Shown: positions 11,901 through 64,000 of the stretch, piece by piece | How positions within the stretch are numbered: position 1 is the first letter of the stretch | Layout of the letters: the number at the start of each line of letters is the position of its first letter | From: Macrostomum lignano | Taxonomy: Eukaryota | Length of the DNA: 64,000 nt | Assembly (NCBI GenBank): GCA_002269645.1 | Contig: NIVC01001062.1 | Coordinates: 248,001 to 312,000 of the forward strand | Direction of reading: 5' to 3' | Notes under the pieces: model-generated | Seen by the model: only the letters and a program-made list of their open reading frames with translations | Told to the model about the DNA's origin: nothing | The model's database searches: none | Made by a program: the position numbers and the translations under genes

Positions 11901-13865
11901 ATGGCTAATAACAGGTATAGATTTGTTAGATTGAATGCCTGGCAAGCTACATATCAGTCGTCCTCTTCATCGGAACCGGATCAAAGGCTTGAACGCATCG
12001 ATCAAACTTGTCCGGCAAGTGACGTTCCATGCGCATCAACCAGATTTCAATCCGGTCAAAATTCTGCGAGAACCTGGCGTAACACTGACGCCACAGAATT
12101 TCAACTATTATTTAATCCATTACTAGCAATTGCAACTGACGGATTGTCCAGGCAGAGGGTCTTGCACTCTGACACTCAGCCCAAACAGTTAAAGTCTTTT
12201 AGTTCTCGATCACAGACTGGCAAGTGCAAGAAGTTGCGCTACTACAAAAGCAGAAGCACATCTGACGGCAGAGTATCGCCTGTGCCGCAGACTCTGGACT
12301 TCCGCAATCAGCGATGGGACACGAGTGGAATGCCGGCCTCGATTCCGCAACACCTGTGGGACATGAGACGAGAAGAGAACAGGTGGCAGTCTTTCCACCT
12401 GCCAGATGCCAGCTTCACAGCGGCTCACCTGGTGTCAGTGACGGATCTGGCTGCTGACGGATTCTTCTACCTACAGGAGACGGACAGAGTTAAGTGTGCG
12501 TTCTGCAAGGGTGTGCTCGAGGGCTGGAAGGCTGGCGAACAGGTCCGAGAGGCTCACAGATGCCACTTCCCCACCTGTCCGTTTGTGCTATTCGTCGAGG
12601 TCGGCAACGTGCCTCGAGAGCACAGGGAGCCGGAAGGAGCCTCGAGGTCAGCAAAGCTGGTCGAGGCAGTGCAGTGCAGTGATCAGATCATAGATGAAGC
12701 CGTAGTGATGGTGAACGGAGACTGGAGCATGAAGCTGGTCGCTGAGCTTCCACCGATTGAGGCCGCTCGGCTGAAAGAGTGGGCGCTGGCGTCAAGAGGA
12801 CTTTGTAGTTCAACCTCTGCTGCTGCAGGACGCGTTGTTGATGACGAGCTGGTCGCAGTTGACCTGATAAAGCATCCTCAGCTTCCAGTGTCGAGCGAGG
12901 TAGCGAGATCTGCGTGCTCCGAGAGAGCGCTCACGGAACTGTCTGCTCTGCAGCACAGTCTCGAGAGTGATCCATCGAGTGTGACTGCCAAGCACGTAGA
13001 GTTCAAGACCTACCAAGCGAGGTCGCAGTCTCTGCACTCGTCTCTCGTTCAGCAGCCAGTGTACTTGCTTGCAAAGGCGGGCTTCTTCTACTCGGAAGAC
13101 GAGCGAGCGACCTGCTGCTTCAGCTGTGGACTTCGCGTTAACGACTGGAGCTGCAGCGATGATGTGTGGATTGAGCACGCTAGATGGTCGCCTCGCTGTC
13201 CTCATGTGTTGTTGGAACGAGGCAGCGACTTTGTGCGGACAGTGCACCGACTGTCACCTCCCGTGCAGCACCCGACTTGTGCTGCCTCAGCTCGGCGTCG
13301 CACCGCACTGGTGCAGTCGGGCTCAACTGTATCAGCTAGTTTTGCGACTGTCGACGAGTCCGTTGCCCCTACTGCAGTCCGCAGCAGTCGCGTAGACCAG
13401 TCTCTCGCAGTCACACCTGGAGTCGAGTTCAGAGTCGAGGCCAAAGACATCAATGCCAGAGCCGACCTGCCCGTTTTGAGACTGCTCACTCAGCTCGGAT
13501 TTTCTGCTCTGCAAGTGAAACTGTTCACAGAGCTGCATCTCAGACAGCGAGGCGATGACTTTGCAACATCGGAGCTGTTCCTCGACTTCATGCTCTCCGA
13601 GAGCCGCCGCATGCGCAAGCAGTCGCAGGATCCGGAGGCGTTCTTCGAGAGCAGGATGTCTCAGATTCGGGAGTCTCTGAACCAACAGCCGAGACACCGA
13701 GACACAATCGACTGGAAGATGTGCAAGGTGTGCATGGACAATGAGGTGAACGTCATGCTTCTGGACTGTGGTCATTTAAACATTTGCTCTCTATGTGCCA
13801 ACTCTGTGACCAGCTGCCCAATTTGCAGAGCGTACATTCGCGGTACTGTGTTGATCAAGATTTAG
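11901..13865 (+). CDS. Inhibitor of apoptosis protein (2 BIR, UBA-like, C-terminal RING), single exon, up to 654 aa; start codon uncertain
   Basis: BIR1 is GFFY..DRVKCAFC..W......EAH....PTCPFV. BIR2 is AGFFY......CCFSC..NDW..DD.W.EHARWSPRC. UBA-like segment LTQLGFS...GDDF. RING is CKVC...CGH..C..C....CPICR at the C-terminus. Confidence 0.93.
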   Translation: MANNRYRFVRLNAWQATYQSSSSSEPDQRLERIDQTCPASDVPCASTRFQSGQNSARTWRNTDATEFQLLFNPLLAIATDGLSRQRVLHSDTQPKQLKSFSSRSQTGKCKKLRYYKSRSTSDGRVSPVPQTLDFRNQRWDTSGMPASIPQHLWDMRREENRWQSFHLPDASFTAAHLVSVTDLAADGFFYLQETDRVKCAFCKGVLEGWKAGEQVREAHRCHFPTCPFVLFVEVGNVPREHREPEGASRSAKLVEAVQCSDQIIDEAVVMVNGDWSMKLVAELPPIEAARLKEWALASRGLCSSTSAAAGRVVDDELVAVDLIKHPQLPVSSEVARSACSERALTELSALQHSLESDPSSVTAKHVEFKTYQARSQSLHSSLVQQPVYLLAKAGFFYSEDERATCCFSCGLRVNDWSCSDDVWIEHARWSPRCPHVLLERGSDFVRTVHRLSPPVQHPTCAASARRRTALVQSGSTVSASFATVDESVAPTAVRSSRVDQSLAVTPGVEFRVEAKDINARADLPVLRLLTQLGFSALQVKLFTELHLRQRGDDFATSELFLDFMLSESRRMRKQSQDPEAFFESRMSQIRESLNQQPRHRDTIDWKMCKVCMDNEVNVMLLDCGHLNICSLCANSVTSCPICRAYIRGTVLIKI

Positions 13866-14855
13866 CAAAAGTAATTATTTTATACGAGCGTATGACAACT
13901 TTACATAGATATTTTATATAGTACTCCAAGCTCATGGTTTATTTGTGTTTTTTTAATAATGAAGTACGAGACGTATTTCTATAGCTAACATAAATGCGCA
14001 TTACGTGTATATATGCGATGTAAACATCCTCTGATGTCGGGTCGAGCTGCTTCCGTTGGACTCAGTGTAGCTCTGATACCGCAATATACCCTTAATTATT
14101 AAATTTAACACCAGTTTTGATACTCGTAATTAGTTCGTTTTTTCAAAACACTAAGATAAACACGAATACGTGTATGAATTTCATCAGCTTGTGTTATTGA
14201 CACTTTCGCCTTGATCTTGCAAGTGCATTGTATTGCATTCCCAGTGCGTCGTTTTCAGTATCTGTTTTTTTACACATATTGATGCTCATCTATTTTTATC
14301 GCGTATGAAGATATTTTTATCGAAGTTAATAAATAAATTTTTGTTAATTATTAAGTGCCTGACTTGTCTACTTGCCTATACAACCATTTAAATTTGATAT
14401 AAATTGCAATTATAGTAGTCATTCCATTCTTTGAGATGTCTTCAGCCCCGTTCTGAGTATAAGCCACAAAATTGGTTTCACTACATGGCGTTGTGATGGC
14501 GTCAGTTTTATTCAAAACTAGAAGGGTAAGCATATCGCATACTATATTAAATGTTTAATACTTCTTTTCACTGTAGTTCTCTTTTGCAAGTTTGTCTAAC
14601 CGCAAAGCAGCGTACATGTCAAACAAATTCAAGCTGAATTCATCCGGCGCATATTAATCCTTTAGTTTACACATACTCCATGCGCGGTCGACCGAAAGCA
14701 TCTAAAATTGTACCTCAGGGTGGCAAAATTTAGTCACATTTGGCTGCACGAACAGCATCAAGGCCAGTGCAATGCTTGCAGTTAGTATATAGTCAGTCAT
14801 GAAATAAACTGACACACATTGCCACTTGAAAAGCTACCAGAAGAAGCAGCGAATC

Positions 14856-16433
14856 ATGAATTCGGAAACCTCTTCTGACACTGAGCTGTGCGTCATCTGC
14901 GGCGAACCGGCTCTAGGCTTGGGTCCGTTCTCTCGCTGCCAACTGTGCGATCATCACCTCAAAATTGATTTAGCGGACGCCTACAAGCTGCAACAGTCTG
15001 TTGCTGATGAACTCGACGCCTACTCGAAAGATGTCGCTAATGACTTGGCGGTGGAATCTGACGAACTTGAAAAACACCTGCTGGAGGTTCAGCTGACGCT
15101 CGCCTCTGTACAGCGAGACGTGCAAGAGTACTGTACCCGATTGGCGGAGCAGTATCGGAAGCGCCTTGAGGCTGTTCATGTTTGCCAGCGGAACCTCGAG
15201 GATGTCTGCAGCTACACCGAGGAGGTGGCCACAGCGGAGAAGGCGGACAGCATTGCCGAGGTGGTTCAGCTGGCCGAATCCATGCAGCTGTCGCTTCCAG
15301 ATTTGAAGTCGGACTTTGAAGTTGCGAAGCGGCTGCGTTCGAAGGCCGACGGCGCCGAGCTGCAGTTGCGACGCCTTCGGCAGCTCAAGCGACTGGTTGG
15401 CAACGCGCTAGCTGGCGCCGAGTTGATAGACGTTACGACGGACACTTCGAGCGACTCTGAATCCGCAGTGGTGCCACTGAGAAAAAACTATTATCCTACC
15501 ACCGATTCAATGAAGCATGAGATTAATAAATCGACTGGTTCGATTATAATTACTCATATAGTGGAGCCAGACGGCTGGGTGCACTGGCTGGACGTGTGCA
15601 GCGACACCAGCGGATTCGTTGCTAACCGTTCAGGTCGCATTGTACCCGCCGAGTCAGCTGATTTTGGTAGTGAAGCTCTGTCCCAACAGTGTGTGTTTGC
15701 AGTCCTGTCTGACAAAGAGTATTTGTTTGTCTTTTCGATGCATAGTTCGCGGTGTTTCCGATGCTATTGTCCGATTAATTGGAGAAAGCTTGTCTGGGGT
15801 CTGCACTGCGACCGTCAGCAGTTGTTCATCGCTCAGCCAGATGTAGTGACTGTAGCAGACCTGAGCGGTCGGATTCGTTTTCAAATTAAGACAGACGTGA
15901 ACAACTTTGGAGACGTCTGGGGCATCGGCGGCAACGCAGCCTTCGTGTTTGTATCCAGCGGCAACAAGATTGCTGCATTCGACAAGTTGCGATTCGAATT
16001 CCAGTTCATCATTACGCTGAGGGAATTCCCCGACGCAGACTTGTACAACATGACATGCCTGCATGACTGCATTCTTGTGGCTGACAAGCATCACAACATG
16101 GTGCACCGAGTGTCCATTGAAAACAGACAGCTCGTGACATCCTTTCCGATTAAGGGTGCTAGCGGCATGGCTCAGTTTACTTATCCGTACGACGTGGTCG
16201 TCGACAGCAGAGGCCGCCTGTTCGTCAGCGAATTCCGCAGTCACTCAGTGCGAGTGGTGGACGCTGAAAGCGGCTCACTGCTGCAGACCCTAGGAGTGCC
16301 GGGCGAGAGCGGCAGCGGAGACGGCAAATTCTGCTGTCCATGCGGTCTAGCGGTGCTGACAGGAGGCACGCGCGACCAGCTGATGGTAGCTGATCGCAAT
16401 AATAAGCGACTTCTAGTATTCAACATCGGGTGA
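14856..16433 (+). CDS. TRIM-NHL-like protein (Cys/His zinc region, coiled coil, NHL beta-propeller), single exon, 525 aa
   Basis: First ATG is at 14856. CVIC...CQLCDHH is followed by a heptad-rich region and then NHL-type repeats (FTYPYDVVVDSRGRLFVSE, GKFCCPCGLAV, LMVADRNNKRL). Confidence 0.8.
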   Translation: MNSETSSDTELCVICGEPALGLGPFSRCQLCDHHLKIDLADAYKLQQSVADELDAYSKDVANDLAVESDELEKHLLEVQLTLASVQRDVQEYCTRLAEQYRKRLEAVHVCQRNLEDVCSYTEEVATAEKADSIAEVVQLAESMQLSLPDLKSDFEVAKRLRSKADGAELQLRRLRQLKRLVGNALAGAELIDVTTDTSSDSESAVVPLRKNYYPTTDSMKHEINKSTGSIIITHIVEPDGWVHWLDVCSDTSGFVANRSGRIVPAESADFGSEALSQQCVFAVLSDKEYLFVFSMHSSRCFRCYCPINWRKLVWGLHCDRQQLFIAQPDVVTVADLSGRIRFQIKTDVNNFGDVWGIGGNAAFVFVSSGNKIAAFDKLRFEFQFIITLREFPDADLYNMTCLHDCILVADKHHNMVHRVSIENRQLVTSFPIKGASGMAQFTYPYDVVVDSRGRLFVSEFRSHSVRVVDAESGSLLQTLGVPGESGSGDGKFCCPCGLAVLTGGTRDQLMVADRNNKRLLVFNIG

Positions 16434-17684: not shown

Positions 17685-20600
17685 CTAATCAATTGACTGG
17701 TATCGAAAAGAATCCTTAAACCAGACGTCACCTCTCAGTTGGTTAATCTCAGAGGGCAAGTTAAATATTGGTTCGAATTCCGGACCGTAGGCAAAAAACG
17801 GACGCCTGCCCAGTTCGTGTCTGACCATATTTAGCATGGCGCACAGATGGCTCCTTTCGTAGTTCCTTCTGATCACATTGCACAGGGTTTGAATGTACGG
17901 GCTGCCTTTATCTGTGATCCGGATTGCCTTATCACCCTTGGTGACAGCGTACGCGATGAGAAAGTCCATTTTGCTTGAACTGACCCTGCCGTATTGGGAG
18001 CTACGGAGTAGCTGCGCAGAACTTTGACTGCCGGATGAACTCCTTGAGCCTTCGATTATTCGACATCCCTGGATAAAGAACAGCTTCGGCTTATTCTGGA
18101 GCGATTTGCAGTCGTAGAACGGGCTTATGACGTCATCCAGCTCGACATAGTTGCCATCTGAGCCCAACAATTTATCGTATTTGCCGTGCGACATGATAAA
18201 GGCCACAAAGCAGTCAAATTTTGTGTGACGATCGCTGGTGGCGAGTTTCCGAACCAGAGCCAGAAGTTTGTTGGCGTTCTTGTCTCTGTGCACCTGTACT
18301 TCAAAATTTAGCGTCTCTCTGAACAGGCTCTCCAGACGATTAACATCCTGCTGCGAGCCAGTGCGAGTTTGAGAGTCGTCGACAAACTTCTCGTTGTTGA
18401 TAATGAGGCAGATCCCGCGAGGCTTGCTGCGCATCGTGTACTGATAGCCGCGTATCGGTGGCACCACACTCGAATTCTGGCTCGAATAGTCCGGTTCGAA
18501 TAGTTCAAAACGGCCTGAATGAGTACCTCCGAAATCGAAATCAAGCCTGCGTCCTCTGCGCGCTGGTCTACTGGAGTAGGTAGTAGAAGGTTATTAAGCA
18601 ATAGTAAACGACTTTAAAAGCCTCATTTCTATACGAGCTAGGCCATTATACCTTCGTTCAGCATAGAAAACACCTTGCATTAATTCAAGATTTCCACGTG
18701 TCAACTATCAAAAATTCTGCACAAACACAACTCTGCTTAGCAGTCTTCCATCCTTAGAAGGCTCAAGTTTACTAGTGTTGTACTACACTCAATGGCACCG
18801 TCACAATAATTTTTCAACTTATTAATTTTGAAGACACATTTTAAAGTCCAAACCTTGTTGGAGCTGCATGGGCTGCCCAGGTACGATGCCTTTGGCCATC
18901 GAGCTGCAGCAGCACCTCAGTTGCGGCTGTCCGATTTGCCCGCACAGCAAGTTCCATTGCGTCGCCTTGGGAGCTTCTGTGGTAGATACTGGCCCCGTAG
19001 TTAGCCAGCAGTTTCAGCATGTCCGCATGGCCCTTGACGGCCGCTAGGGTAAACGCAGTGTTGCGGTTTTTTCTAGAGCTTGTCTCCAGCTCTAAATTGG
19101 CGTTGCGTTTAATCAACAGTTCGGCAAGCTCTTGAAGATTCTCCTGGGCGCAAAAGTGCAAAGCGCTAAATCCATCTGCCTCCTGGTTGTTGACGCTGGC
19201 CCTTCTATCCAGCAGAAGTACGGCGATAGCCCGACGATTCAACCAGGCGGCTCGAATCAACGGAGTCCGGCTGTCGGAGCTCTTGGCGTTGATGTCAATG
19301 GATGTCTGGTCCAGTAGGATCTTAGCGACTCGGCGGCTGTCCTGCTGCACCGCGATGTGCAACGCCGTGACGCCCAGATCCTGCTGCGCGACGTTGGGAT
19401 CCGCGCCTCGATCCAGCAGCAGCCTGCAGGTGGCCTCGTCATCGTTCCAGGCGGCCGCCATCAGGACGGTCCAGCCCGGGTCCTGCCTAATCCGCTCGTT
19501 GATGCGTCGCTGTAGGGCGCCGCCGCTGGACTCGAGCAAGTAGCGCACCTTTCTCGTATTGCCGTCCATTGCAGCTTTGAAAACCTTCGATATGGTCAGC
19601 TCGTCGGTGTTTTGCGTCGATTTTGACCTGTTTGAAATAGATTCGAGTAAATGGTGGTTTTTTGGGATAAGATGGGTATTTCAGCATCTTGGTCAAGGTC
19701 TTTGTACAGTAGTATATAAAGTCTTTTCATTTCAGCAGGCTCTAGTTGGTGGTTCAAAATATTTAAGGTCTATTTTTTAAACGGGGTCGCTTCACAAGCT
19801 CAAAATTTCACAACCTCGAAAATTTTAGCAGCTTGTGAAATCGCCTGCTAAAATGGTTTTCGAGGTTGTGAAATTTCGAGCTTATGAAGTCGCTTGCTAA
19901 AATTTTCGAGGATATGAAATTTCGAGCTTGTAAAAGCAACCCCCCCCGTGTTGCTTTTACAAGCTCAAAACAAAACGAAACACAAGCTTCACAAGGTTCT
20001 ATGATTAAAACTACGGTCTATGGCTAAGCAATAAGGTATGGTTAAAACTAGTTTCTATGGTAAAACTATGGTCTATGATTAAAACTAGCCAGAGTCAGAG
20101 CTGAACCATTGCGACTAACAACTCCACCGCGCTAGCCTGTATACAGTCTCACATGAGCTCCAACACGACGTTAACCGCGTCTAACTGACGTGCCCGTTTG
20201 GCCTCGTCGCAGATCTGCGGCAGCCATTCGTTGCCGGCCCATTGAGCGTCCAACTGCAGAAGCCGTCTTAGCATTGGCCTCAGGACGTCGAGATGACCGC
20301 GGACAGCTGCGAGCTTGACCGGGCAGAGCGGACTGCCGTTGCCGCCGCCGCCGCCGCTGTTCATCAACTCGTTGAAGCCTGCCCGGCTGACCAGCAACTC
20401 GACCAACGGCCTTGCCGAGTCGAAATCTGCGCAGAAATGAAGCGGCGTCGAACCCCAGGCGTCTCTTATGGACAGCTTGGCGCCGGCGTGCAGCAGCTGG
20501 CTGACGCAGGCCTCGCTCCCGGCTTGGACTGCCGCGTGCAGGGCGGTCGTCTGGCTGGAATTCGTCGACCGAAGATTGACGTGCAAACTGGCGTTACTGC

Positions 20601-21821
20601 TGCGATCTCTTCTGATTGCTTCTAGAAGCAGTTTTAGCGCTTCCGGTTTATCCAATCCAGCTGCTAGCATCAGCGGTGTCTGACCCGTTGTCCGGTCCAT
20701 CGCGATCGCCTGATTGACGCCTTCGCCATCGCTCAGCAAGATGTTTCGAACTCGGTCGAGCCTGTCGCTTCGGATCGCTTTGGTGAGGCTGAGTTGCTTG
20801 GATCGCTTTTGCCTATTGGTGGCGGTAAAAGGTGTAAATGAGGTCGTGCTGCTTGTTTTTAGATTTAAGTTTTTACACTTCCTAGTGAACTCCACCAGGC
20901 CCTTTTGTCCTTTCCGTACTCTTTTCATCAGGAGGCTCCTTGATGATTGACTCACCTCCCGCCAACAACTCTCCAGCTCTTCAACAGGCTGAGCAGTTCA
21001 GGCGAAGCCGGCACGCCTGCCATTTTCACTTGGTCCAAAGCTGTGCAACCCTCGCTATTTACCAGATTTGGATCGGCGCCGCTCGCGTGCAGCAGTCGCA
21101 GCATCTCAACGTGACCATTCAGAGCAGCTAAAGCAAACGCTGTGCTACTCTTGAACTCGGGCCTGGCTGTCCGATTGACCAGTTCATGTGGCGCTTTAGC
21201 CAGAATGCGCTTAGCAATCTCGCGTCTGTCCAGCTGGGCGCAAAGGTGCAACGCGGTGAAGCCGCTCTTTGAGGCCAGGTCAAGCCTGGCGCCACGATCG
21301 ATGAGCAGGCAAGCCAGCTGGACGCTGTTCTCAAACACCGACTTCATCAGAGCGGTGAATCCTTGCTGGCTACTCTGCTGGTTCAGCTGGATGTTCCTAT
21401 GGTCCAGCAGCAGTTTTGCTAGTTCGATGTGACCAAAATCGACGCAGATCATCAATGCGGTGACGTCATTCTTAGCCAACAAGTTCACATTGGCGCCAGC
21501 GTTCAACAGTAGTTTAGCGACGCTAAATAAATTCTGCCTGGCGCAAATGTGCAACGCGCCGAGCCCCGAGCTGTCGCGATGGTCCAGCGGAGACTTCCGT
21601 TCAATCAGCAGCCGGCAGATGTTTACATTTTCGCCATTGGTTGAAGCCGCGGCAGCCATCAGTAGGCTCCTGTTGCGGTCATTTTTGTTGATCCAGCCGG
21701 GTGACAAGCCCTCGCTGAGGTAGCCTCGAACTCTACTATAATCACCTTTTCTACAGGCTTCGTAAAGTTTGTAGTAGAGCTGCTGTTCATTAGGCGCTTT
21801 GGATGCGGATGCAGCTGCCAT
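17685..21821 (-). CDS. Ankyrin-repeat caspase: roughly 17-20 ANK repeats fused to a C-terminal peptidase C14 domain, 4 exons, about 1061 aa
   Basis: Exons 21821-20956, 20812-20153, 19627-18854 and 18570-17685 (3186 nt). Donors AG|gtgagt, AT|gtgaga, AG|gtttgg; acceptors aatag|, aaacag|, ctccag|; all three introns are phase 2. The caspase frame has no upstream ATG and meets a stop just 5' of its acceptor. Caspase motifs: RGICLIINN, TRTGS..D, FIMSHG, KPKLFFIQGCR, DFLIAYA, GSPYIQTLC. Confidence 0.8.
19781..19966. repeat. Foldback / nested inverted repeats in intron 2 of the ANK-caspase gene
   Basis: An imperfect stem of about 40 bp (about 19795-19831 against 19845-19885) and a perfect 17-bp stem GAGCTTGTAAAAGCAAC (19924-19940 / 19950-19966) with a 9-nt loop. 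Confidence 0.8.
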
Positions 21822-22225
21822 CTTCTGGTCAAGTCTGATTGTTTAGTCAACAGCTAAGCAAAAATATGCGATTAAGCTTGGTTGGTTTTCTTAACTTAGA
21901 CCTTGGCTGCAAGTCTCTATACCGCGAGATAAAATCAGAAATGTACGAATATAAATTTCTTGGAATTACTTGGCCCTGCAGCTAAGTCGACACTAACAGA
22001 GAGAGATAGGGAGAGAGAGAGCGAGTGAGCAAAAGCTATTTACATGCACACGCTTAGTCAATCGTAATAGCGTCGCATTAATACCGTTGCATTTGTATCG
22101 CTAGGCATATAGAAGTTCCCCTTTCTCAGTATTGCATGTACATGTATTGCTTGGAAATTCAAAGCATGATCTGCGATAGTTTATGAGTTAAATCAGCTTA
22201 ACTATATACTTACAATACGCAATTG

Positions 22226-22941
<716 letters not shown>

Positions 22942-24300: not shown

Positions 24301-24583
24301 CTCTTCTCTTCTCTCTCTCTTCTCCCTCTTCTCTCTCTTCTCTCTCTCTTCTCTCTCTCTTCTCTCTCTCTTCTCTCTCTTTTCTCTCTTCTCTCTTTCT
24401 TCTCTCTCTTCTCTCTCTTTTCTCTCTTCTCTCTCTCTTCTCTCTCTCTTCTCTCTCTCTTCTCTCTCTTTTCTCTCTTCTCTCTCTCTTCTCTCTCTCT
24501 TCCCTCTTTTCTCTATCTCTTCTCTCTCTTCTCTATCTCTTCTCTCTCTCTTCTCTCTCTTCTCTCTCTCTCTCTTCCTCTCT

Positions 24584-24635
<52 letters not shown>

Positions 24636-25302
24636 CTTTTCTCTCTTCTCTCTCTTTTCTCTCTTCTCTCTCTCTCTCTCTCTTCTCTCTCTCTTCTGTC
24701 TCTTCTCTCTCTCTTCTCTCTCTTCTCTCTTCTCTCTCTCTTCTCTCTCTTCTCTCTCTCTTCTCTCTCTTCTTTCTCTCTTCTCTCTCTTCTCTCTCTT
24801 TTCTCTCTTCTCTCTCTCTCTCTTCCTCTCTCTTCTCTCTCTCTTCTGTCTCTTCTCTCTCTCTTCTCTCTCTTCTCTCTCTTCTCTCTTCTCTCTTCTC
24901 TTCTCTCTCTCTTCTCTCTCTTCTTTCTCTCTTCTCTCTCTTCTCTCTCTCTTCTCTCTCTTCTCTCTCTCTTCTCTCTCTTCTTTCTCTCTTCTCTCTC
25001 TTCTTTCTCTCTTCTCTCTCTTCTTTCTCTATTCTCTCTCTTCTCTCTCTCTTCTCTCTCTTCTTTCTCTCTTCTCTCTCTTCTCTCTCTCTTCTCTCTC
25101 TTCTCTCTCTTTTCTCTCTTCTCTCTCTCTTTTTTCTCTCTTTTCTCTCTTCTCTCTCTCTCTTCCTCTCTCTTCTCTCTCTCTTCTGTCTCTTCTCTCT
25201 CTCTTCTCTCTCTTCTCTCTCTTCTCTCTTTTCTCTTCTCTTCTCTCTCTCTCTCTTCTCTTCTCTCTCTCTCTCTTCTCTCCCTCCTCTCTTCCCTCTC
25301 TT
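24301..25302. repeat. About 1 kb CT-only low-complexity polypyrimidine tract
   Basis: Almost exclusively C/T. The Leu/Ser/Phe ORFs are artefacts. Confidence 0.97.
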
Positions 25303-26536: not shown

Positions 26537-29500
26537 TTAGAAGCTCATCTTCCTTCCAGCTGAATTGCTCAAAGCTTCAAGTTCGCTTTCAACCCTAGCA
26601 GTTCCAGCCGTTTTGCAGCGTCGGTACGCACCTACTGACGATTGAGCAGATTGTTCAATCTGTCCTAGGGTCTCCAGCTGGATGCTTGACGTCGTCCCTT
26701 GCCGCTCGGCCTCAATATCGACCACCGTGCACAGGGTTGACGAATTCTCGGGCGCATCCGAACCGGTCTTGGCGGTAAATGTTTTAACCGACGTTTCCGT
26801 TGGCGGCAGGTGCAAATCCACCCAGCTGGCCTGGTTTCTGTCACTAACAGTGGATCTCACCCGCAGGGTTCGCTTGCGTCGATCGCATGCGATGAGGCGG
26901 CCCAGACGGCACAGTTTGTGCCAGAAGCCGTATCTGATTTTGTTGGCGCGTTGTACTCTGTGCAAAAAGTGCATGGTGGACTTGCTCTTGGCGACGCGAT
27001 CGATAAAGCTGACTAGAACCGCGATGAGAAAGTTAAGAGTCAGTATAGCGAACATCAAGATGTAGACAAAGTGCAACACCTTGATCTCGGTCTTCTTGAA
27101 CTCCATGGTCAGAGTGGAGTTGCCAAATCGTCGGGTGGTCGGATCGAACAGGTTCAGCGAGGTGGTGAAGATCCGGTAGAACTCGCCAAGAAAGCTGGGC
27201 ATGTCCATGCTGGCGAACTGGCCCATGTCGGCGCCAACCTGGTGCAAGATGCCGGCAGTCTGAGCCCAGAACAGATTGGCGAATATCACGATGCAGAAGA
27301 TGTAGATTAGGCTAAGCTGCATGAAGCGCTCCAGCACTTGACGAAACATCATCACGGTTTCGCCAAACAATGGCGCACTCTCCATCATGTACAGGAACAG
27401 CAGGTTGACGCACAGGGCGCACATGTGCAAAAAGCAGCCGATGCCTTGAAAGATTGTGTCAAACTCTTGAGCGATGGTTTTCACGGATAGAATCGCTTCG
27501 CTCGATGTAAAATTGAGGCTAACTCGCTGAATAAGTGCGCAAGCGCTGAGCTGTACCAGCCCGAGTGAGCAGGAGTTGGTAATGCTGTTGAAGTAGGTCG
27601 CCAGAAGCCAGTAGCAGATCCAGCAAAGCAGGCACACGATGAGCAGCAGATCGGTGCGCTGAGTGCGTCTCTCGTACAGATGGCGGTAGCGCACGCTGCG
27701 CCACTTCAGCTTGCAGTGGCTGATTGCGACGGATGCCAGCACGCGGAATGGGAACAGCGCCGCTTTAATCAGAATCATCAGGGCGATGACTAAACCCACA
27801 ATTTGCACCACCTTATGCCCGTCCGCTATGTCAATATAAAACGGCGTTGTCTCATTGCAAAAGTTGTTGCGCATTTCAACTATCAGAGCGTCAAGCTTGC
27901 TGCTTTCGAGTCCCATAACGTAGCGCAGCCTCTTCTCGACGTCCTCCTTCGCTAGCATGACGCCGGCGTGGATCGGCACCGTCACTGGCGGCCTGGCAAC
28001 CGGGCTGCACTTCACCGCGGCCAGTGGGTCGGCTGCGGCAGCCGACTCGTGGAAGAAGCCGTACTGCATCGGCATGGGGATGTACAGCATGCACAAGCAG
28101 AGAATCCAGGGCAGCAGTTCGAAGGCCAAAACGATTTTAACGCTCCACGAGATGCCCATGCGCAGCAGGGCCGGGTGCTGCAGGAAGCCGGACTCCTGCA
28201 GGCGGGCGATCTGCTCTGGCGAGGCCAGCGAAGTCAGCAGAACCATCGGCGCTCGATGATACCTGTTGCGATGACTGCCAACGATGTACTCGTCCAACAG
28301 GTAGTTCTTAGTAACTAAGTTGCCATGCACGCTGGAGTGAACGTAGACACCCGGCAGTTCTAATAAGATCACCGCCAGCTCGTAGCACTCCAGGTAGATG
28401 GCTAGTTCCAAACTGTTGAAGTCGAAGTCATCGGTTCGTCTGGCCGTTGCGCGGGTGACCGCCGCACCTCCGGACTCCAGGGCTGTCCGCAGGAACTCAG
28501 CGTAGGCGGCTGTGGGTTTCACCTGCCACATTTTTCAGATTGCGCAATTATTTTTCGAAGTAGTAGCTTTACAAGATTGCATCGCTATATAAAAAAATTA
28601 CGACTTTCCTACTCAAGTTTTACTTTTCCATGTTATGTGTATATTCCTACTGAAAGTACGAGATAAAAGTCCAAAAATGTACTTTTGGGGAGATGGGAAA
28701 TGGGAGGGCGATTTTCTATGGGGGGAGATAGGAGGGGCGATTCTCTATGGTTGAGATGGGAGGGGCGATTCTCTATGGTTGAGATTGGAGGGACGATTCT
28801 CTATGGGGGGTCAATGGGGGGAGATGGGAGGGGCGATTATCTCTATGGGGGGATGGGAGGGGCTATTTTTTATGTGGATATGGGAGGGGCGATTCTCTAT
28901 GGAGAGATGGGAGGGGCGATTCTCTATGGTTGAGATTGGAGGGGCGATTCTCTATGGGGAGATGGGAGGGGCGATTCTCTATGTGGGAGATGGGAGGGGC
29001 GATTCTTTATGGGGAGATGGGAGGGGCGATTCTCTATGTGGGAGATGGGAGGGGCGATTCTCTATGTGGGAGATGGGAGGGGCGATTCTCTATGGGGATA
29101 TGGGAGGGGCGATTCTCTATGGGGAGATGGGAGCGGCGATTCTCTATGTGGGAGATGGGAGCGGCGATTCTCTATGTGGGAGATGGGAGGGGCGATTCTC
29201 TATGGGGATATGGGAGGGGCGATTCTCTATGGGGAGATGGGAGCGGCGATTCTCTATGTGGGAGATGGGAGCGGCGATTCTCTATGTGGGAGATGGAAGG
29301 GGCGATTCTCTATGGGGAGATGGGAGCGGCGATTCTCTATGTGGGAGATGGGAGGGGCGATTCTCTATGTGGGAGATGGGAGGGGCGATACTCTATGGGG
29401 AGATGGGTGGGGCGATTCTCTATGTGGGAGATGGGAGCGGCGATTCTCTATGTGGGAGATGGGAGGGACGATTCTCTATGGGGAGATGGGTGGGGCGATT

Positions 29501-32500
29501 CTCTATGGGGGATGGGAGGGGCGATTTTCTATGGGGAGATGGGAGGGGCTATTCTCTATGTGGGAGATAGGAGGGGCGATTCTCTATGGGGATGGGAGAT
29601 GTGAAGACAGTTAAAATTATATCATTCTACAAATTATTTAATAATTGGCATATTTAGTATGATTCTTAGCTGTCAAATGATGACGATATAGCTAGTCTAA
29701 AAATAAGAGCAAAAAAGTGCAGACGTTATAGTGCAAAACAATCTCTCTGAAGCACAATGGACTAAAACTCAACTGTGCAATAGTTTAGGGTAACTAGGAA
29801 AACATTGACGCGGAATTGCACCAGTTTCTATTAATAGATTGTCTGGAGGGGTAGCTCGCAAAAGCCTCAATTCTAATTGTAAAGTGCACACTGAAATGCC
29901 TACATTTTAAACATTCTAGAGCTAGCTACTAACAGTAGGAGAATAGCATATTGCTAGATATTTTCACTGGCGGAGAGGCAGCGCTTGCGCTACATGGCGA
30001 GACAGTTGCGAGAACGGAGCTGCAGGAGAGAAAAGCCCAGTGCCAGTCAGTGTACACTCTCCGCGGGGATTGATGCTGTGCTATTTTTAGCTCAGTGAGT
30101 GACGCACAGCGAGTGACCACAAGCGGCGGGCGGGCGAGACAGCCATTATAAATAGCGAATAGCCCGGGCTGTGGTGAAAATCAACCTGAGAAAGCGGAAT
30201 AAATAATCCGTTTTATTGCTCCATACTCTACTACACTTTAGATAGATTTTTTACTATTAATAAAAGAATTATCAATAATCATATCATGGGATTATCCGGT
30301 CGACGAAGAGCCAAACCCATCAATCGTAGATCTGCAGCAGCAACAACAAACTCATCGTCTGCTACAGAGGAGGATTTTCACGCTACTCATCGTATTCAGG
30401 AGAGCAAAGTCAGGCGCCTGGGTCACACGTATCGCAGAGTTCTGCACGCCGAGGCCAGAGAGAGGAAGCACACTAATCTGCTGGCATTCCACACCAATAG
30501 AGGCTGGAGTAACAGCCTACTGCCTGCTGAGCAGGCCCGTCATCCAGATAGTCAAGTGTCAACTAATGCTAATTTGTACAATCGGAAAATGGTCAGGCTC
30601 ATGGATAAAGAGTGAGTACTTTGTATTCGATGCTTCCTTGCCTTTTAGCTCAGGTACTGTATAGGCGCTCCTGTCTCTTGGTGGGCGCCTTACTCTTTTC
30701 TCTCAGGCCGATGGGTACCACGTCCAAGAGGTGGCAAAAGCTGAGTTACCAGCTTCCTCGTCATTGGAGCAGTGCCTGTTTTATTGGATAGCAATTTTCG
30801 TGGGGTGACAGTGACCCCTCCTGCCCCCGTACGCCACTTAAGGCCCGTAGGCACCATTACTTATGAGACATGACATCTTATGAGCACTATGTATATCATA
30901 TATCATCAACCAATTCCTTGCGCAGTTTCACTAGCGACGTGACCTACTCTCTAAACAAGAGTCAACGATGGAACTTCATCAAGCAACTGGTAGAAGAGTA
31001 CGATGCCAACGAGGAGTTGAAGTCGCAGAACGTCTTCTTTACCGAAGCCGTCGCCAGAGGACGCAAAGAAGCGTCAGCGAAGAAGTTGCTGACAAACGCA
31101 ACTTACACGGTGAAGGCAGCGGACGAACTGAGACACCACAAGAAGGAGCTCAATAAAAAGATCGTTCGCGAGTCTGCAAAGCAGAAGAAGCTGAGTGCCG
31201 CGGTGCGAAATCAGCTAAAGCAGCAGGTGCTGAACAATGATAGATTCCAGTTTAGCGACCAAGTGAAGAGCATGCAGACGGAGCGACCTCTGATTACCAT
31301 TGGTTCAGCTAGCCGCGGCGGATCCGTGAACAAGGCATCCATCCAGCGAACCTGCAACCTGTGGAATCACCTGTACAAAGTGTCACCCAATGCTGAGGAA
31401 GTCCGGGGTGACCTGCAGCGCGACTACGACAGTCGGATGAGCGTCAGCGTTGGCACCTGCGTGCCCTGCCCTGGCGTCGATGTTAAACGGTGCACCCAGT
31501 CGGAGAAGGAAACAAAGACTGTGAAGCGTTATGACCTTCGACGGCCAAGTCCAAGGAAGAGGGAACGGATGCTTCAGAAGCGGATGCGATTTGAAATGGA
31601 GATGCAATTCGACATGGACGGATGCTGGCATCTGCCGGAGACAACTGCATCTACCGAGGCGGACGAGGAGCTGGATGTCTGCCCTGACCGTCCGACCGAG
31701 TGCATCGCTCTAATTGAGTTTGCTCGACCGAAGATTTCGGCCAATCGGGACAAGAAACTGGCGGCCAAGGAGCGCAAGCTGCGTCATCAGCAGCTGATGG
31801 AGAATAAGAGGAAGCAGCGTAGCAACAGCGACCAGACTTCCGGCGGAAGCTCCGGCTACGACTCAGGCGCGGAGGAGAGCGTGGAGAAGTTCGAAACTCA
31901 GATAGAAACGGTTAAAGAAGTTGATCAATTCGATATTCGGCTGGCTCAGTCGGTGGAGGCCAGTCTATGCTCTCCTCGACCAGTGGTTGCCGTGCCGCGA
32001 GTCGCAGCTCAGACCAGCCGCATTGCTGAGCTGTTTGCTGAGGCTTCGATCTCAAGCGCTCTGGCTATCTCTGCGTCTACACCAAGGAAGCTGGCTGTTA
32101 TGCTGCATCCCGATCTCTCAGAGAGCATCGTTTTCGAAGAGATGGACGAGACAGACTCCGACGGGACTCGGTTCTCGGTTCAGCACTTGCGTCGAAGCGA
32201 TGCAGCGGCTCCGAGAACATCAGCAGCCGAAGTGGCTACTCAGGCTGATCCGTTTGACTTTCTGCGAAGACTTGCAGCTGACGCGGCCTCGAGTGAGCCG
32301 GCGGCTTGTAGGGCTCCCGAAAAGGCAGCTACCGCAGGGGCCACGATCTTGGGCTGGAAGCCAGCAAAGGCGATCTCCGAGTCGGAGGCGCGGCTGGCCG
32401 CAATCCGAGCTCTGCCGATGTTCAATCCGCCATCGACTGTCGCTGTCGATGCCGAGCTGGTGCCCGCTCTAGACTGCGAGATCTGCTGCCAGCAGCTGCC

Positions 32501-35500
32501 TGTCGGCACCGCCGACTCCTTCGCCGATGGTGCTACAATGCTGGGCGAGTGCGGCCACCGCTTCTGCAACCCCTGCTGGCTGCAGCACGTCGCTAGCAGC
32601 GTCGCCGAGGCCGCGCCGACGTCTCGTGTCCGGGCTTCCGGTGCGAGACGCCGCTGGACCCGGCCACGCTGCTGTGGTTCTGCCCGGCCGACCTCGTGTC
32701 GGCTCTGGCCGCAGCCGCCTTCCGATTGTGGCTGTCGGATCGAAGCGAGCAGCGGGTCCAGCGGCGGCTGTGCCCGCTGACGAACTGCGGCAGAGTATTG
32801 GAGAGCCCAGCCGGAGTGAACGCCGTGTGCCAGTGCAGCGGCTGGGGCCTCTGCGTTGGGTGCGGCCAGGAGCCGCATTGGCCGAGCGACTGCGCCACCG
32901 CCTCTAAGTGAGTATCTCTGAATGCACGCACATGCTCTGGCGTCTGTCATCCGTAGCTTCAGTTGTTTATAAATAAACACACATTGATTCTCACTGTTTA
33001 GATATCGCGCCAAGATGAAGTCTCTCGGACACGAGAAGCTTCTGCTAAGCGATCTGAACGCCGAGACCGACGTGAACGCCAAGCAGTGCCCGTCCTGCTT
33101 CCTGCTGATGGAGAAGGGTGTCGGCTGCAATCACATGTCCTGTCCGTGCGGAGAGCACTTCTGCTGGTGGTGCGGTCAGACGATGCGCGACCACAAAAGC
33201 GGTCCCTGCTTTGGCGCCAAAGTCAAGACCCGGTCCGAGTTCCGCGTCCAACGCGTGTTCACCGCGCAGGACTCCTTCCTAGTGCCCAACAGCACCCAGT
33301 CCCGGGCCTATTGTGCCGCAGTTCGAGTTCGCCTCGGCCGAGCCAGCAGTAAGACTTCTCTCGGACTGAGCAACGTCACGGTCAAGAAGCTGGCGAGTCT
33401 GTTCGCGTCCAACTTGATTCGATTTCAGCGAGTCGCCTGGTCCGAGGCCGAACGTCGAGCTCGGGAGACGGCCAGCCGGCTGGTGCGAGCGACAGCGCAC
33501 GCCAGCTACCTGGTGGAGTATTCGTACGCCTACCTGGACAATCAGCGGGTTGAACGGCGTACTGGCACCGCCGTGCGAGCTCTGGGGAGTCACATTGTCC
33601 AGCTGGTTGACTCGATGTCTAGCGAAGCTAAAGTGCAAAGCAAAAGAGGATTCCAGGGGCCGAAGCAGACACGGCTGGCCTGTGAGCGGCTGCTGATGAT
33701 GCTGAGCTGTCTGGAGAGCAAATGCCGGCTGCTGTACTGCATCGTGGCCAATCAGCGAACTCAAGGAACTCGACTTGACCACATAGGGAAGACTTTGAAG
33801 GCGTGAATCGTGACTGATGCTCTTTGCTCCATGAAATAACTGTCAGTTGTATTCAATCATACCAAAGTAGAATGGCTAATCAACTTCTCATGATGGCAAT
33901 AATAAATAAACATCATGATTTATTTATGGCTAAATTGTCCAATAAAATTTTTTTAACTTTGAATCGCTAAAGACAGCTGTCTTTTCTACGAAATCAACCT
34001 TTACTCACCTAATTGGGAGGCCTTTAGAAGATCATTTGGAGCGGGTGTCATTGTTATTACCATAAAGTTTTTCGTAAGATTTCATGTAACAGTGCTATAA
34101 GTACTACTGAAAGTAAGTAATATCCACATGGAATGACGAAACACGTTAGACCCAGACATCACGCGGAAAGACACGGTAAACCAAGCTTAGAGACACGAGG
34201 CACCAAGCTTAAAGACACGGGGCACCAAGCTTAAAGACACGGGGCACCAAGCTTAAAGACACGAGACTGCAAGCTTAAAGACACGAGACTCCAAGCTTAA
34301 AGACACGAGACTGCAAGCTTAAAGACACGAGACTCCAAGCTTAAAGACACGGGGGCACCAAGCTTAAAGACACGGGCACCAAGCTTAAAGACACGAGACT
34401 CCAAGCTTAAAGACACGGGGCACCAAGCTTAAAGACACGAGACTGCAAGCTTAAAGACACGAGACTCCAAGCTTAAAGACACGGGGCACCAAGCTTAAAG
34501 ACACGGGGCACCAAGCTTAAAGACACGAGACTCCAAGCTTAAAGACACGGGGCACCAAGCTTAAAGACACGGGGCACCAAGCTTAAAGACACGAGACTCC
34601 AAGCTTAAAGACACGGGGCACCAAGCTTAAAGACACGGGGCACCAAGCTTAAAGACACGAGACTGCAAGCTTAAAGACACGAGACTCCAAGCTTAAAGAC
34701 ACGGGGCACCAAGCTTAAAGACACGGGCACCAAGCTTAAAGACACGAGACTCCAAGCTTAAAGACACGGGCACCAAGCTTAAAGACACGAGACTGCAAGC
34801 TTAAAGACACGGGGCACCAAGCTTAAAGACACGGGGCACCAAGCTTAAAGACACGAGACTGCAAGCTTAAAGACACGGGGCACCAAGCTTAAAGACACGG
34901 GGCACCAAGCTTAAAGACACGAGACTGCAAGCTTAAAGACACGAGACTCAAGCTTAAAGACACGGGGCACCAAGCTTAAAGACACGAGACTGCAAGCTTA
35001 AAGACACGAGACTCCAAGCTTAAAGACACGAGACTGCAAGCTTAAAGACACGAGACTCCAAGCTTAAAGACACGGGGGCACCAAGCTTAAAGACACGGGG
35101 CACCAAGCTTAAAGACACGAGACTCCAAGCTTAAAGACACGGGGCACCAAGCTTAAAGACACGAGACTGCAAGCTTAAAGACACGAGACTCCAAGCTTAA
35201 AGACACGGGGCACCAAGCTTAAAGACACGGGGCACCAAGCTTAAAGACACGAGACTCCAAGCTTAAAGACACGGGGCACCAAGCTTAAAGACACGGGGCA
35301 CCAAGCTTAAAGACACGAGACTCCAAGCTTAAAGACACGGGGCACCAAGCTTAAAGACACGGGGCACCAAGCTTAAAGACACGAGACTGCAAGCTTAAAG
35401 ACACGAGACTCCAAGCTTAAAGACACGGGGCACCAAGCTTAAAGACACGAGACTGCAAGCTTAAAGACACGAGACTCCAAGCTTAAAGACACGGGGCACC

Positions 35501-63628: not shown

Positions 63629-63790
63629 GCATGATTTTGTCTGTCTGTCTGCCTGCCTGTCTGTCTGTCTGTCTGTCTGCCTGCCTGTCTGTCTGTCTGA
63701 CTGTCTGCCTGTCTGTCTGTCTGTCTGTCTGTCTGCCTGCCTGTCTGTCTGTCTGTTCTGTCTGTCTGCCTGTTTGTCTGTCTGTGTGAC

Positions 63791-63823
<33 letters not shown>

Positions 63824-63850
63824 TTCTGTCTGTCTGTCCGTCTGTCTGTG

Positions 63851-63907
<57 letters not shown>

Positions 63908-64000
63908 GCCTGCCTGCCTGCCTGCCTGTCTGTCTGTTCTGTCTGTCTGCCTGTCTGTCTGTCTGTGTGACTGTCTGTCTGTCTGTCTGTCTGTCTGTCT
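63629..64000. repeat. (TCTG)n microsatellite, probably intronic in Nup133; runs off the window end
   Basis: Direct reading. Confidence 0.95.

What the first reader, a model, noticed from the sequence alone, without database searches (positions are those of the whole stretch)
17685..21821. Ankyrin-repeat caspase: four separate ORFs splice into one ~1061-aa ANK(n)-caspase protein
Seen: three ANK ORFs and a caspase ORF are in tandem on the minus strand. Each junction has a GT donor and an AG acceptor in matching phase 2. Exons 3 and 4 are open upstream of their listed starts exactly to those acceptors; this restores a full ANK repeat (VFKAAMDGNTRKVRYLL) and a linker. Established: metazoan initiator caspases typically carry CARD or DED prodomains, and I do not know a long ankyrin array as a standard prodomain. 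Inference: a sensor- or scaffold-activated caspase, possibly a lineage-specific immune or death receptor-protease. The weakest link is the exon-3 donor GTTTGG.
Basis: partly seen in the sequence, partly recalled or inferred. Interest (0 to 1): 0.88.

Follow-up and report, generated by a model that had tools for sequence, protein, structure and literature searches.

The report
Flatworm caspase with ankyrin-repeat prodomain
The four reading frames are one real four-exon gene of a Macrostomum flatworm, encoding a cell-death protease (caspase) with a long ankyrin-repeat arm in place of the usual recruitment domain; this type of caspase was already described in flatworms, so the only new point is that it occurs in a free-living species.

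Summary
On the minus strand, exons 21821-20956, 20812-20153, 19627-18854 and 18570-17685 join through three GT..AG introns (143, 525 and 283 nt, all phase 2). They give one 1061-aa protein: about 17-21 ankyrin repeats, a linker, and a canonical caspase domain with its catalytic residues intact.

Three things support the model:
- A Macrostomum lignano UniProt model, 97-98% identical, uses the same three junctions.
- A 62%-identical M. lignano paralog (PAA92194.1) comes from an RNA-seq-based annotation. Its introns sit at the same positions and phases.
- Synonymous-only changes occur in a conserved exon-4 segment that has no start codon of its own.

The novelty claim does not hold. "ANK caspases" of flatworms were reported in 2014 and analysed in 2024 (PMC11463336). 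What is new is modest. That paper says ANK caspases are restricted to parasitic flatworms, yet free-living Macrostomum carries at least five sequence types. One type groups with a monogenean ANK caspase (94% bootstrap). The window gene belongs to a different group with a long repeat array, seen here only in Macrostomum.

Function is untested. The most likely role is an initiator-like caspase recruited or regulated through its ankyrin array.

The parts
20956..21821 (-). Exon 1 (866 nt). Start codon at 21821-21819. Encodes ANK block 1, about 7-8 repeats, aa 1-289 (the last codon is split).
   Evidence: ORF; Ank_2 E=1e-32; the paralog's exon 1 is also 866 nt and phase 2; the frame is closed upstream at 21842.
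20813..20955 (-). Intron 1, 143 nt, phase 2, GTGAGT...CCACCAATAG.
   Evidence: The junction ...WRVVGGR|QKRSKQLSL is used in P0243; the coordinates come from the sequence and the 1061-aa spliced CDS they give. If the intron is retained, the exon-1 frame stops at TGA 20954-20952.
20153..20812 (-). Exon 2 (660 nt, symmetric phase 2-2). Encodes ANK block 2, about 5-6 repeats.
   Evidence: Ank_2 E=5e-26; collinear with paralog aa 289-499.
19628..20152 (-). Intron 2, 525 nt, phase 2, GTGAGA...TTCAAACAG. It contains a foldback (MITE-like) inverted repeat at 19790-19970.
   Evidence: This is the only acceptor in phase with the strong donor at 20152; P0243 uses the same junction...VVLELM|SKSTQNTDEL; inverted repeats.
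18854..19627 (-). Exon 3 (774 nt, symmetric phase 2-2). Encodes ANK block 3, about 7 repeats, a collinear duplicate of block 1.
   Evidence: Ank_2 E=1e-33; the exon-1 and exon-3 blocks are 35% identical over 204 aa, E=1e-24.
18571..18853 (-). Intron 3, 283 nt, phase 2, GTTTGG...CTACTCCAG.
   Evidence: The paralog has AAG|GTTAGA at the homologous position and phase; P0243 uses the junction ...AAHAAPT|SRPARRG.
17685..18570 (-). Exon 4 (886 nt including the TAG stop at 17687-17685). Encodes the linker plus the caspase domain.
   Evidence: Peptidase_C14 E=2e-45; best solved structures are caspase-7 (1.6e-28) and caspase-8.
17712..18425 (-). Caspase catalytic domain (aa 816-1053). His895 is at 18188-18186 and Cys936 (motif QGCRI) at 18065-18063. 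The P1-pocket residues are Arg836, Gln934 and Arg984.
   Evidence: Alignment to caspase-7; coordinates; these residues are invariant in the paralog.
18438..18491 (-). Conserved end of the linker. It holds a candidate prodomain-removal site FEPD794 (paralog AEMD) followed by NSSVVPPIRGYQY (aa 799-811). All of it lies upstream of Met813, the first in-frame ATG of exon 4.
   Evidence: E792, D794 and S796 are invariant. The 13-aa stretch is identical in the paralog despite 6 synonymous nucleotide differences.

Best explanation
This is one four-exon protein-coding gene of Macrostomum lignano or a very close relative. It encodes a 1061-aa 'ANK caspase'. The N-terminal prodomain has three ankyrin-repeat blocks, one per exon, with 17 repeats recognisable by sequence and about 21 helix hairpins in a structure model. 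A low-complexity linker of about 50 aa follows, then a canonical, apparently catalytically competent caspase domain.

Shown here: the gene structure, the domain content, intact catalytic and P1-pocket residues, protein-level constraint on all four exons, and the existence of related proteins.

Inferred (about 40% for this specific mechanism): it acts like an initiator caspase in which the ankyrin array replaces the CARD or DED death-fold. The array binds a still unknown partner or scaffold. This concentrates the zymogen so that caspase domains dimerise. The enzyme then auto-processes at the conserved xExD site (FEPD794) and perhaps at D969, and goes on to cleave executioner caspases or other substrates.
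For: Gene model:
- Frames and splice sites.
- The same junctions in UniProt A0A1I8I0Q1 (P0243), 97-98% identical to the window.
- Paralog PAA92194.1 is 62% identical and collinear end to end. Its three introns have the same positions and phases.
- That paralog's annotation derives from a genome-guided RNA-seq transcriptome, which cuts transcripts at trans-splice sites (PMC5730564).

Coding constraint: 69-82 codons per exon differ synonymously while encoding the same residue. The segment NSSVVPPIRGYQY has no upstream ATG within exon 4, yet it is conserved with only synonymous changes.

Protease: PF00656 E=2e-45; caspase-7 and caspase-8 are the best solved structures, and R, H, Q, C and R align.

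Initiator-like affinity: many of the closest non-flatworm relatives whose domains were checked carry DED (caspase-8/10-like). [quoted passage not shown]

Ankyrin surfaces can bind caspases: designed ankyrin-repeat proteins are cited.
Against: - No RNA data for this exact locus were available, so exon joining here rests on comparison.
- The active-site pentapeptide is QGCRI rather than QACxG.
- The intersubunit linker has a single Asp (D969).
- Ankyrin arrays are not known to self-assemble as death-folds do, so proximity-induced activation needs an unidentified multivalent partner.
- The structure model was uninformative for the caspase part and for domain contacts (pLDDT below 50).
- In a neighbour-joining tree the window gene does not group with the one parasite ANK caspase I recovered. 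Function cannot simply be transferred from that clade, which is itself uncharacterised.
Confidence: 0.72

Rival explanations
1. Autoinhibition or sensor model. The ankyrin array binds its own caspase domain, or keeps it monomeric. It releases the domain when a ligand binds the array or when the linker is cut at FEPD794. The array would then be a regulatory lid, not a recruitment arm.
For: Designed ankyrin-repeat proteins bind and inhibit caspases (references quoted in PMC11463336). A conserved xExD motif sits between the array and the protease. The repeat array is very long, 17-21 units.
Against: There is no evidence of an intramolecular contact, because the structure model is unreliable for the caspase part. 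This model is not exclusive of the recruitment model.
Confidence: 0.2
2. Two products. Exon 4 is expressed on its own, for example spliced-leader trans-spliced at the 18570 acceptor and translated from Met813 as a prodomain-less caspase. Exons 1-3 would then give a separate ankyrin protein.
For: Met813 lies just before the Pfam caspase domain and is conserved in the paralog. Trans-splicing is frequent in M. lignano, at 38.8% of genes.
Against: The 13 residues before Met813 are identical in a 62%-identical paralog, with six synonymous changes and no upstream ATG in the exon. Exon 3 has no stop before its donor. The RNA-based annotation pipeline that cuts at trans-splice sites kept the paralog as one 1067-aa product. 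A short isoform in addition to the long one is not excluded.
Confidence: 0.06
3. A silent or decaying duplicate. The locus is one of many copies in a hidden-polyploid genome and is not functional.
For: M. lignano has extensive duplications and at least five ANK-caspase sequence types. The active-site motif is the unusual QGCRI. Only a chimeric model (A0A1I8I0Q1, 2049 aa) was recovered for this copy.
Against: There are 1061 uninterrupted codons. All six splice sites are intact. The catalytic dyad and P1 pocket are intact. The 2-3% differences from P0243 introduce no stops.
Confidence: 0.07
4. Targeting model. The ankyrin array anchors an active protease to a membrane protein or the cytoskeleton for local, possibly non-apoptotic, proteolysis. 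It would not control activation.
For: Long ankyrin arrays such as those of ankyrins are the top non-caspase hits. It is established general knowledge that such arrays typically tether membrane proteins.
Against: There is no transmembrane, ZU5 or death domain, and no partner is known. Similarity to ankyrins is only generic repeat similarity, at 21-27% identity.
Confidence: 0.12

Closest known systems
Macrostomum lignano PAA92194.1 / PAA51086.1 (BOX15_Mlig008053g1, 1067 aa, 'hypothetical protein')
   Same: 62% identity, collinear over the whole length. Same three ANK blocks plus caspase. Same four exons, with introns at identical positions and phase. Exon 1 is 866 nt in both.
   Different: A divergent paralog, not the same locus. 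Its introns are 1795, 228 and 166 nt against 143, 525 and 283 nt here. Its motif is QACRP against QGCRI. Its intersubunit linker is longer, with three Asp sites. No IAP or NHL neighbours occur within 10 kb.
UniProt A0A1I8I0Q1 (M. lignano, 2049 aa, 'ANK_REP_REGION domain-containing protein')
   Same: 97-98% identical to the window across all four exons, using the same three junctions. It continues to match the window for another 16 kb, so it represents the same locus or an allele or homeologue.
   Different: A chimeric model. After the caspase it runs into the antisense strand of the neighbouring NHL gene and further sequence. It lacks the last residues of the caspase.
Platyhelminth 'ANK caspases' (Horkan et al. 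2024, PMC11463336; first noted in Schistosoma, Lee et al. 2014). The example recovered here is Cichlidogyrus casuarinus KAL3319427.1.
   Same: Ankyrin pro-domain followed by a caspase domain. Found in flatworms. The caspase domain lies near the DED caspases.
   Different: The paper states they are restricted to parasitic flatworms. The monogenean protein is 799 aa with few detectable repeats. In my tree it groups with the short M. lignano ANK caspase PAA94436.1 (94% bootstrap), not with the window gene. The window protein has a much longer array in three modules.
Other M. lignano ANK-containing caspases: PAA56209.1 (723 aa), A0A1I8GZW9/PAA73468.1 (about 650 aa), PAA94436.1 (599 aa), and PAA47029.1 (ANK + protein kinase + caspase, 1060 aa)
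   Same: ANK repeats lie N-terminal to a Peptidase_C14 domain. The window gene groups weakly with all of these except PAA94436.1 (44% bootstrap).
   Different: 28-29% identity in the region compared. Their arrays are shorter, and one has an inserted kinase domain.
DED initiator caspases (caspase-8/10)
   Same: Long N-terminal prodomain plus a C-terminal caspase domain. They are among the nearest non-flatworm relatives of the protease domain.
   Different: No DED or any other death-fold was detected in the window protein. According to PMC11463336, FADD, the DED-caspase activator, is absent from flatworms.
ANK-caspase models outside flatworms: Sanderia malayensis EP00794_P009253 (jellyfish) and the Alitta virens ANK caspase reported in PMC11463336
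   Same: Ankyrin repeats and a caspase domain occur in one predicted protein.
   Different: They are not close in sequence. The jellyfish model has two ANK-caspase units and may be a merged prediction. These are probably independent fusions.

Membership tests
Caspases (peptidase family C14A) | Significant match to the caspase domain profile across both the p20 and p10 parts | tested here: met
   PF00656 E=2.3e-45, 155 bits against a cutoff of 21.4, covering profile positions 1-212 of 233. Caspase-7 structure 1shj E=1.6e-28 over residues 8-256.
Caspases (peptidase family C14A) | Catalytic His-Cys dyad in the SHG and QxCxx motifs | tested here: met
   IMSHG (His895) and IQGCRI (Cys936) align with caspase-7 LLSHG and IQACRG. 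The fifth position is Ile instead of Gly.
Caspases (peptidase family C14A) | The Arg/Gln/Arg triad that binds the P1 aspartate | tested here: met
   Arg836, Gln934 and Arg984 align with the corresponding caspase-7 residues and are invariant in the paralog.
Caspases (peptidase family C14A) | Asp-specific endopeptidase activity | not testable with these tools
   Needs a recombinant enzyme and a substrate assay.
Platyhelminth ANK caspases (Horkan et al. 2024) | Ankyrin pro-domain and caspase domain in a single polypeptide | tested here: met
   The spliced model is 1061 aa. The junctions are shared with P0243 and with the RNA-based paralog annotation. The linker upstream of the first Met of exon 4 is under coding constraint. 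No RNA evidence for this exact locus.
Platyhelminth ANK caspases (Horkan et al. 2024) | Flatworm origin | tested here: met
   97-98% identity to a M. lignano UniProt entry over more than 20 kb of the locus.
Platyhelminth ANK caspases (Horkan et al. 2024) | Membership of the monophyletic ANK-caspase clade that contains the parasite sequences | tested here: inconclusive
   Neighbour-joining tree with 100 bootstraps. The window gene pairs with PAA92194 (100%). The monogenean ANK caspase pairs with M. lignano PAA94436 (94%). Monophyly of all flatworm ANK caspases was recovered in only 2% of replicates, and the deep nodes are unresolved. Only one parasite sequence was available.
Platyhelminth ANK caspases (Horkan et al. 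2024) | Restriction to parasitic species (a distribution claimed in the paper, not a structural feature) | tested here: not met
   Macrostomum is free-living, and it has at least five ANK-caspase sequence types confirmed by Pfam.
CARD/DED initiator caspases | Death-fold (CARD or DED) prodomain | tested here: not met
   No CARD, DED or Death hit at E<=0.01 in any of the four exon translations; only ankyrin families and PF00656 were found.
Metacaspases, orthocaspases and paracaspases fused to repeats | Protease domain closer to metacaspase or orthocaspase than to animal caspases | tested here: not met
   The best hits are animal caspases throughout: caspase-7, -8 and -3 structures, and coral, mollusc and vertebrate caspases.

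The most novel reading that the evidence does not exclude
ANK caspases did not arise with parasitism. They would already have been present, and diversified, in the common ancestor of Macrostomorpha and Neodermata (early Rhabditophora). Macrostomum would retain both an orthologue of the parasite-type ANK caspase (PAA94436-type) and a lineage-specific radiation. That radiation includes this 1061-aa form with three repeat blocks and an ANK-kinase-caspase. This would overturn the published 'parasite-specific' scenario. It would also make the function of a candidate anthelmintic target class testable in a free-living flatworm with RNAi and transgenesis.
Probability: 0.5. Interest if true: 0.45.

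Novelty: new member of a known kind. Interest (0 to 1): 0.33.

Why it matters
The architecture itself is not a discovery. It is published, and the protein is already in public databases as an uncharacterised entry.

The value is corrective and practical. The only comparative study I found states that ANK caspases are confined to parasitic flatworms, and links their origin to parasitism and the loss of DED caspases. The evidence here shows a multi-member ANK-caspase family in a free-living flatworm. One member groups with a monogenean ANK caspase. If this holds with full sampling, the evolutionary scenario needs revising.

Macrostomum lignano is transgenic and regeneration-competent. It would therefore be a convenient system for finding out what an ankyrin prodomain does for a caspase: which partner it binds, how it is activated, and what its substrates are. 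None of this is known experimentally for any ANK caspase.

Tried and rejected
1. First splice models. I first tried a 17- or 35-nt intron 1 (acceptors at 20939 and 20921). I rejected these once P0243 showed the acceptor at 20813 (143 nt). That acceptor removes a 36-aa linker absent from the paralog and gives 1061 aa.
2. Acceptor CGAAG|G at 19585 for exon 3. It is out of phase with the donor at 20152 (568 nt). Only 19628 fits.
3. The look-up of encoding contigs on the neighbouring IAP ORF found no record.
4. The word-indexed homology searches were lossy. The caspase-only query missed both M. lignano proteins. The full-length query missed P0243. The trimmed five-sequence profile missed P0121, P0272 and P0335. 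Absence from those lists is therefore not evidence of absence. The exhaustive HMMER search was decisive.
5. Synteny. No IAP, NHL, channel or RBR homologues were found within 10 kb of the paralog gene in L001.
6. Structure prediction with a two-row alignment. The ankyrin part was usable (pLDDT 60-84). The caspase part was below 50. I drew no inter-domain inference and ran no fold search.
7. Neighbour-joining trees. Shallow pairs are well supported, but the deep branching is unresolved. The monophyly of all flatworm ANK caspases, and their position relative to DED caspases, could not be tested properly.
8. Literature searches for 'Peptidase_C14 + ankyrin' and 'Schistosoma + caspase + ankyrin repeats' returned nothing relevant. 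The supplements of PMC11463336 are not held, so I could not check which M. lignano sequences its authors used.
9. The bacterial promoter and terminator scan of the 3' flank is irrelevant for a eukaryote and was ignored.
Full report
**What is in the sequence.**
Between 17685 and 21821 the minus strand carries four consecutive ORFs of 289, 268, 242 and 260 aa. Pfam assigns the first three to ankyrin-repeat families (Ank_2 E=1e-32, 5e-26 and 1e-33) and the fourth to the caspase domain PF00656 (E=2.3e-45). The window is eukaryotic. It has long exons, many mini- and microsatellites, and neighbouring animal-type genes.

**Splice model.**
A map of the open frames shows exon 1 in one frame, exons 2 and 3 in a second, and exon 4 in the first again. 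My first attempts used the nearest in-phase acceptors for intron 1 (17 or 35 nt) and gave 1097-1103 aa. These turned out to be wrong.

The correct structure is:
- Exon 1: 21821-20956.
- Intron 1: 143 nt, GTGAGT...AATAG.
- Exon 2: 20812-20153.
- Intron 2: 525 nt, GTGAGA...AACAG.
- Exon 3: 19627-18854.
- Intron 3: 283 nt, GTTTGG...TCCAG.
- Exon 4: 18570-17685.

All three introns are phase 2. The CDS is 3186 nt and encodes 1061 aa with only the terminal stop. The exon-3 and exon-4 frames remain open 52 and 20 nt beyond their acceptors.

**Independent support for joining the exons.**
1. An exhaustive HMMER search with the caspase domain returned P0243, which is UniProt A0A1I8I0Q1 from Macrostomum lignano.
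   - It is 97-98% identical to the window in all four exons and uses the same three junctions.
   - It also matches the window further downstream, at 16244-14985 and 1604-1395.
   - The window is therefore M. lignano or a very close relative.
   - That model is otherwise chimeric, since it runs into the antisense strand of the next gene.
2. The full-length model hits PAA92194.1 (P0121), a 1067-aa M. lignano 'hypothetical protein' carrying ANK and PF00656 domains. BLASTP gives 58% identity and 99% coverage. A global alignment gives 62% identity and is collinear.
   - In its locus (L001, NIVC01000059.1) I reconstructed the exons that reproduce the protein exactly.
   - There are four exons, and exon 1 is again 866 nt.
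   - The donors are GAA|GTGAGT, AAT|GTAAGA and AAG|GTTAGA.
   - The introns are at the same positions and all phase 2.
3. The GenBank annotation of that assembly comes from a genome-guided RNA-seq transcriptome. Its pipeline cuts transcripts at trans-splice and poly(A) sites (PMC5730564). The paralog's ANK-caspase fusion therefore rests on RNA evidence.
4. All four exons show protein-level constraint between the paralogs, with 69-82 synonymously different codons per exon that encode identical residues. In particular, NSSVVPPIRGYQY (aa 799-811) is identical in both despite six synonymous changes. It lies upstream of the first in-frame ATG of exon 4 (Met813), so it can only be translated from upstream exons.

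**Anatomy of the protein.**
- A profile seeded on the ankyrin consensus finds 17 repeat units.
- An AlphaFold2 model shows 21 helix hairpins running without a long break from aa 12 to 760, at pLDDT about 60-84.
- The caspase part of that model is unreliable because the alignment had only two rows.
- Each of exons 1-3 encodes one ANK block that begins with a capping half-repeat.
- The exon-1 and exon-3 blocks are collinear duplicates, 35% identical over 204 aa, E=1e-24.
- Exons 2 and 3 are symmetric (phase 2-2, 660 and 774 nt). This is what exon duplication or shuffling would leave behind.
- The linker (aa 767-815) is poorly conserved, except for an xExD motif (FEPD794; AEMD in the paralog) and the stretch that follows it.
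- The caspase domain aligns with caspase-7, caspase-8, a chain deposited only as 'Caspase' (3sir_A) and caspase-3 structures (best E=1.6e-28). It retains Arg836, His895, Gln934, Cys936 and Arg984.
- The pentapeptide is QGCRI.
- The intersubunit linker contains one Asp (D969), conserved as K[ML]D|F.

**What is already known.**
Horkan et al. 2024 (Genome Biol Evol, PMC11463336) describe 'ANK caspases' as a clade-specific flatworm caspase type with an ankyrin pro-domain.
- They note it was first identified in Schistosoma (Lee et al. 2014, Trends Parasitol).
- They place it as sister to the DED caspases.
- They suggest these enzymes may be initiators.
- They also report an ANK caspase in the annelid Alitta virens.

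A search of the literature for 'ANK caspase' and its variants found only this paper and its preprint.

**Where the present locus differs from the published picture.**
[quoted passage not shown] The databases show otherwise. Besides the window type (A0A1I8I0Q1) and PAA92194.1/PAA51086.1, M. lignano has:
- PAA56209.1 (723 aa).
- A0A1I8GZW9/PAA73468.1 (about 650 aa).
- PAA94436.1 (599 aa).

All three carry Pfam-significant ankyrin repeats N-terminal to PF00656. The 'kinase' caspase PAA47029.1 also has ankyrin repeats before the kinase domain.

Among the 150 best caspase-domain hits I also found a monogenean ANK caspase (Cichlidogyrus casuarinus KAL3319427.1, 799 aa) and a jellyfish model with ANK-caspase units (Sanderia malayensis). 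Of the long non-flatworm hits whose domains I checked, the commonest prodomain is DED (caspase-8/10-like).

**Phylogenetic position (tentative).**
I built a neighbour-joining tree from 213 aligned caspase-domain columns with 100 bootstraps.
- The window gene pairs with PAA92194 (100%).
- M. lignano PAA94436 pairs with the monogenean ANK caspase (94%).
- The window pair groups weakly (44%) with PAA56209, A0A1I8GZW9 and the ANK-kinase caspase.
- A single clade of all flatworm ANK caspases was recovered in only 2% of replicates, and the deep nodes are unresolved.

My reading is that Macrostomum has an orthologue of the parasite-type ANK caspase plus a lineage-specific set of longer forms, to which the window gene belongs. 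Whether all of them descend from one fusion event is open.

**Mechanism.**
Nothing is known experimentally for any ANK caspase. The best-supported inference is an initiator-like enzyme. The reasons are:
- a very long prodomain;
- a protease domain with affinity to DED caspases;
- flatworms lacking FADD;
- a conserved xExD site between the prodomain and the protease;
- intact catalytic machinery.

On this view the ankyrin array would supply the protein-protein interface that CARD or DED supplies elsewhere. Three rivals remain:
- An autoinhibitory or sensor role for the array. Ankyrin scaffolds can bind and inhibit caspases.
- Pure subcellular targeting.
- Less likely, a separately expressed short caspase or a non-functional duplicate.

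These are scored in the rival list.

**Context.**
The caspase gene ends at 17685. An NHL-repeat ORF (14826-16433, +) and an IAP-type ORF with two BIR domains and a RING (11901-13865, +) follow in convergent orientation. The proximity of an IAP and a caspase is suggestive, but it is not conserved at the paralog locus and was not pursued further.

**Verdict.**
The observation and the gene model are correct. The protein is a real ANK-prodomain caspase. The kind is already known, and this very protein family is already in databases. The residual interest is that it sits in a free-living flatworm as part of an unreported multi-member family, which contradicts a published distribution claim.

Noticed in passing
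window 11901-13865 (+): A single-exon 654-aa IAP-type gene with two BIR domains (PF00653 E=3e-26) and a C-terminal RING. It lies 3.8 kb beyond the 3' end of the ANK-caspase gene, in convergent orientation. It could be a regulator of the caspase. It is not syntenic at the paralog locus.
   Followed up: partly
window 14826-16433 (+): A 535-aa ORF with an NHL repeat (PF01436) and an N-terminal Cys-rich region, lying between the IAP and the caspase gene. Its antisense strand was wrongly incorporated into UniProt model A0A1I8I0Q1.
   Followed up: partly
window 34167-45895: An 11.7-kb satellite of a 22-nt unit, AAAGACACGGGGCACCAAGCTT, with about 534 copies at 88% matches. It has a strong strand asymmetry, AT skew about 0.55.
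   Followed up: no
window 22224-22941, 24301-25302, 48986-50107, 60336-62673, 63638-64000 and others: An unusually dense set of micro- and minisatellites: (TGTC)n, CT-rich 9-20-nt units, and 22-23-nt units. They create long spurious ORFs on both strands.
   Followed up: no
window 19790-19970 (inside intron 2): A foldback, MITE-like element. It has inverted repeats of 33-40 nt at 90-94% complementarity, plus a 21-nt hairpin at 19920-19970.
   Followed up: no
window 20153-20812 and 18854-19627: Exons 2 and 3 are symmetric (phase 2-2, lengths divisible by 3), so each could be skipped without breaking the frame. The ANK blocks of exons 1 and 3 are collinear duplicates, E=1e-24.
   Followed up: partly
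window 30870-32780 and 33015-33806 (+): Two adjacent ORFs with a RING (PF00097) and an IBR domain (PF01485). This is probably one RBR-type E3 ligase gene split by a short intron.
   Followed up: no
window 26537-28531 (-): A 664-aa ORF with several hydrophobic segments that looks like a membrane or channel protein, but it has no Pfam hit at E<=0.001.
   Followed up: no
related proteins P0305, P0365, P0375 (not in the window): Among the nearest caspase-domain relatives are other unusual fusions: an Acropora millepora 'GT4-conflict' glycosyltransferase + caspase, a Ptychodera flava LRR + caspase, and M. lignano ANK + protein kinase + caspase.
   Followed up: partly
tool behaviour: The word-indexed protein search missed hits that were 51-98% identical and that the exhaustive HMMER search found. 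Negative results from the word-indexed search should not be read as absence.
   Followed up: yes
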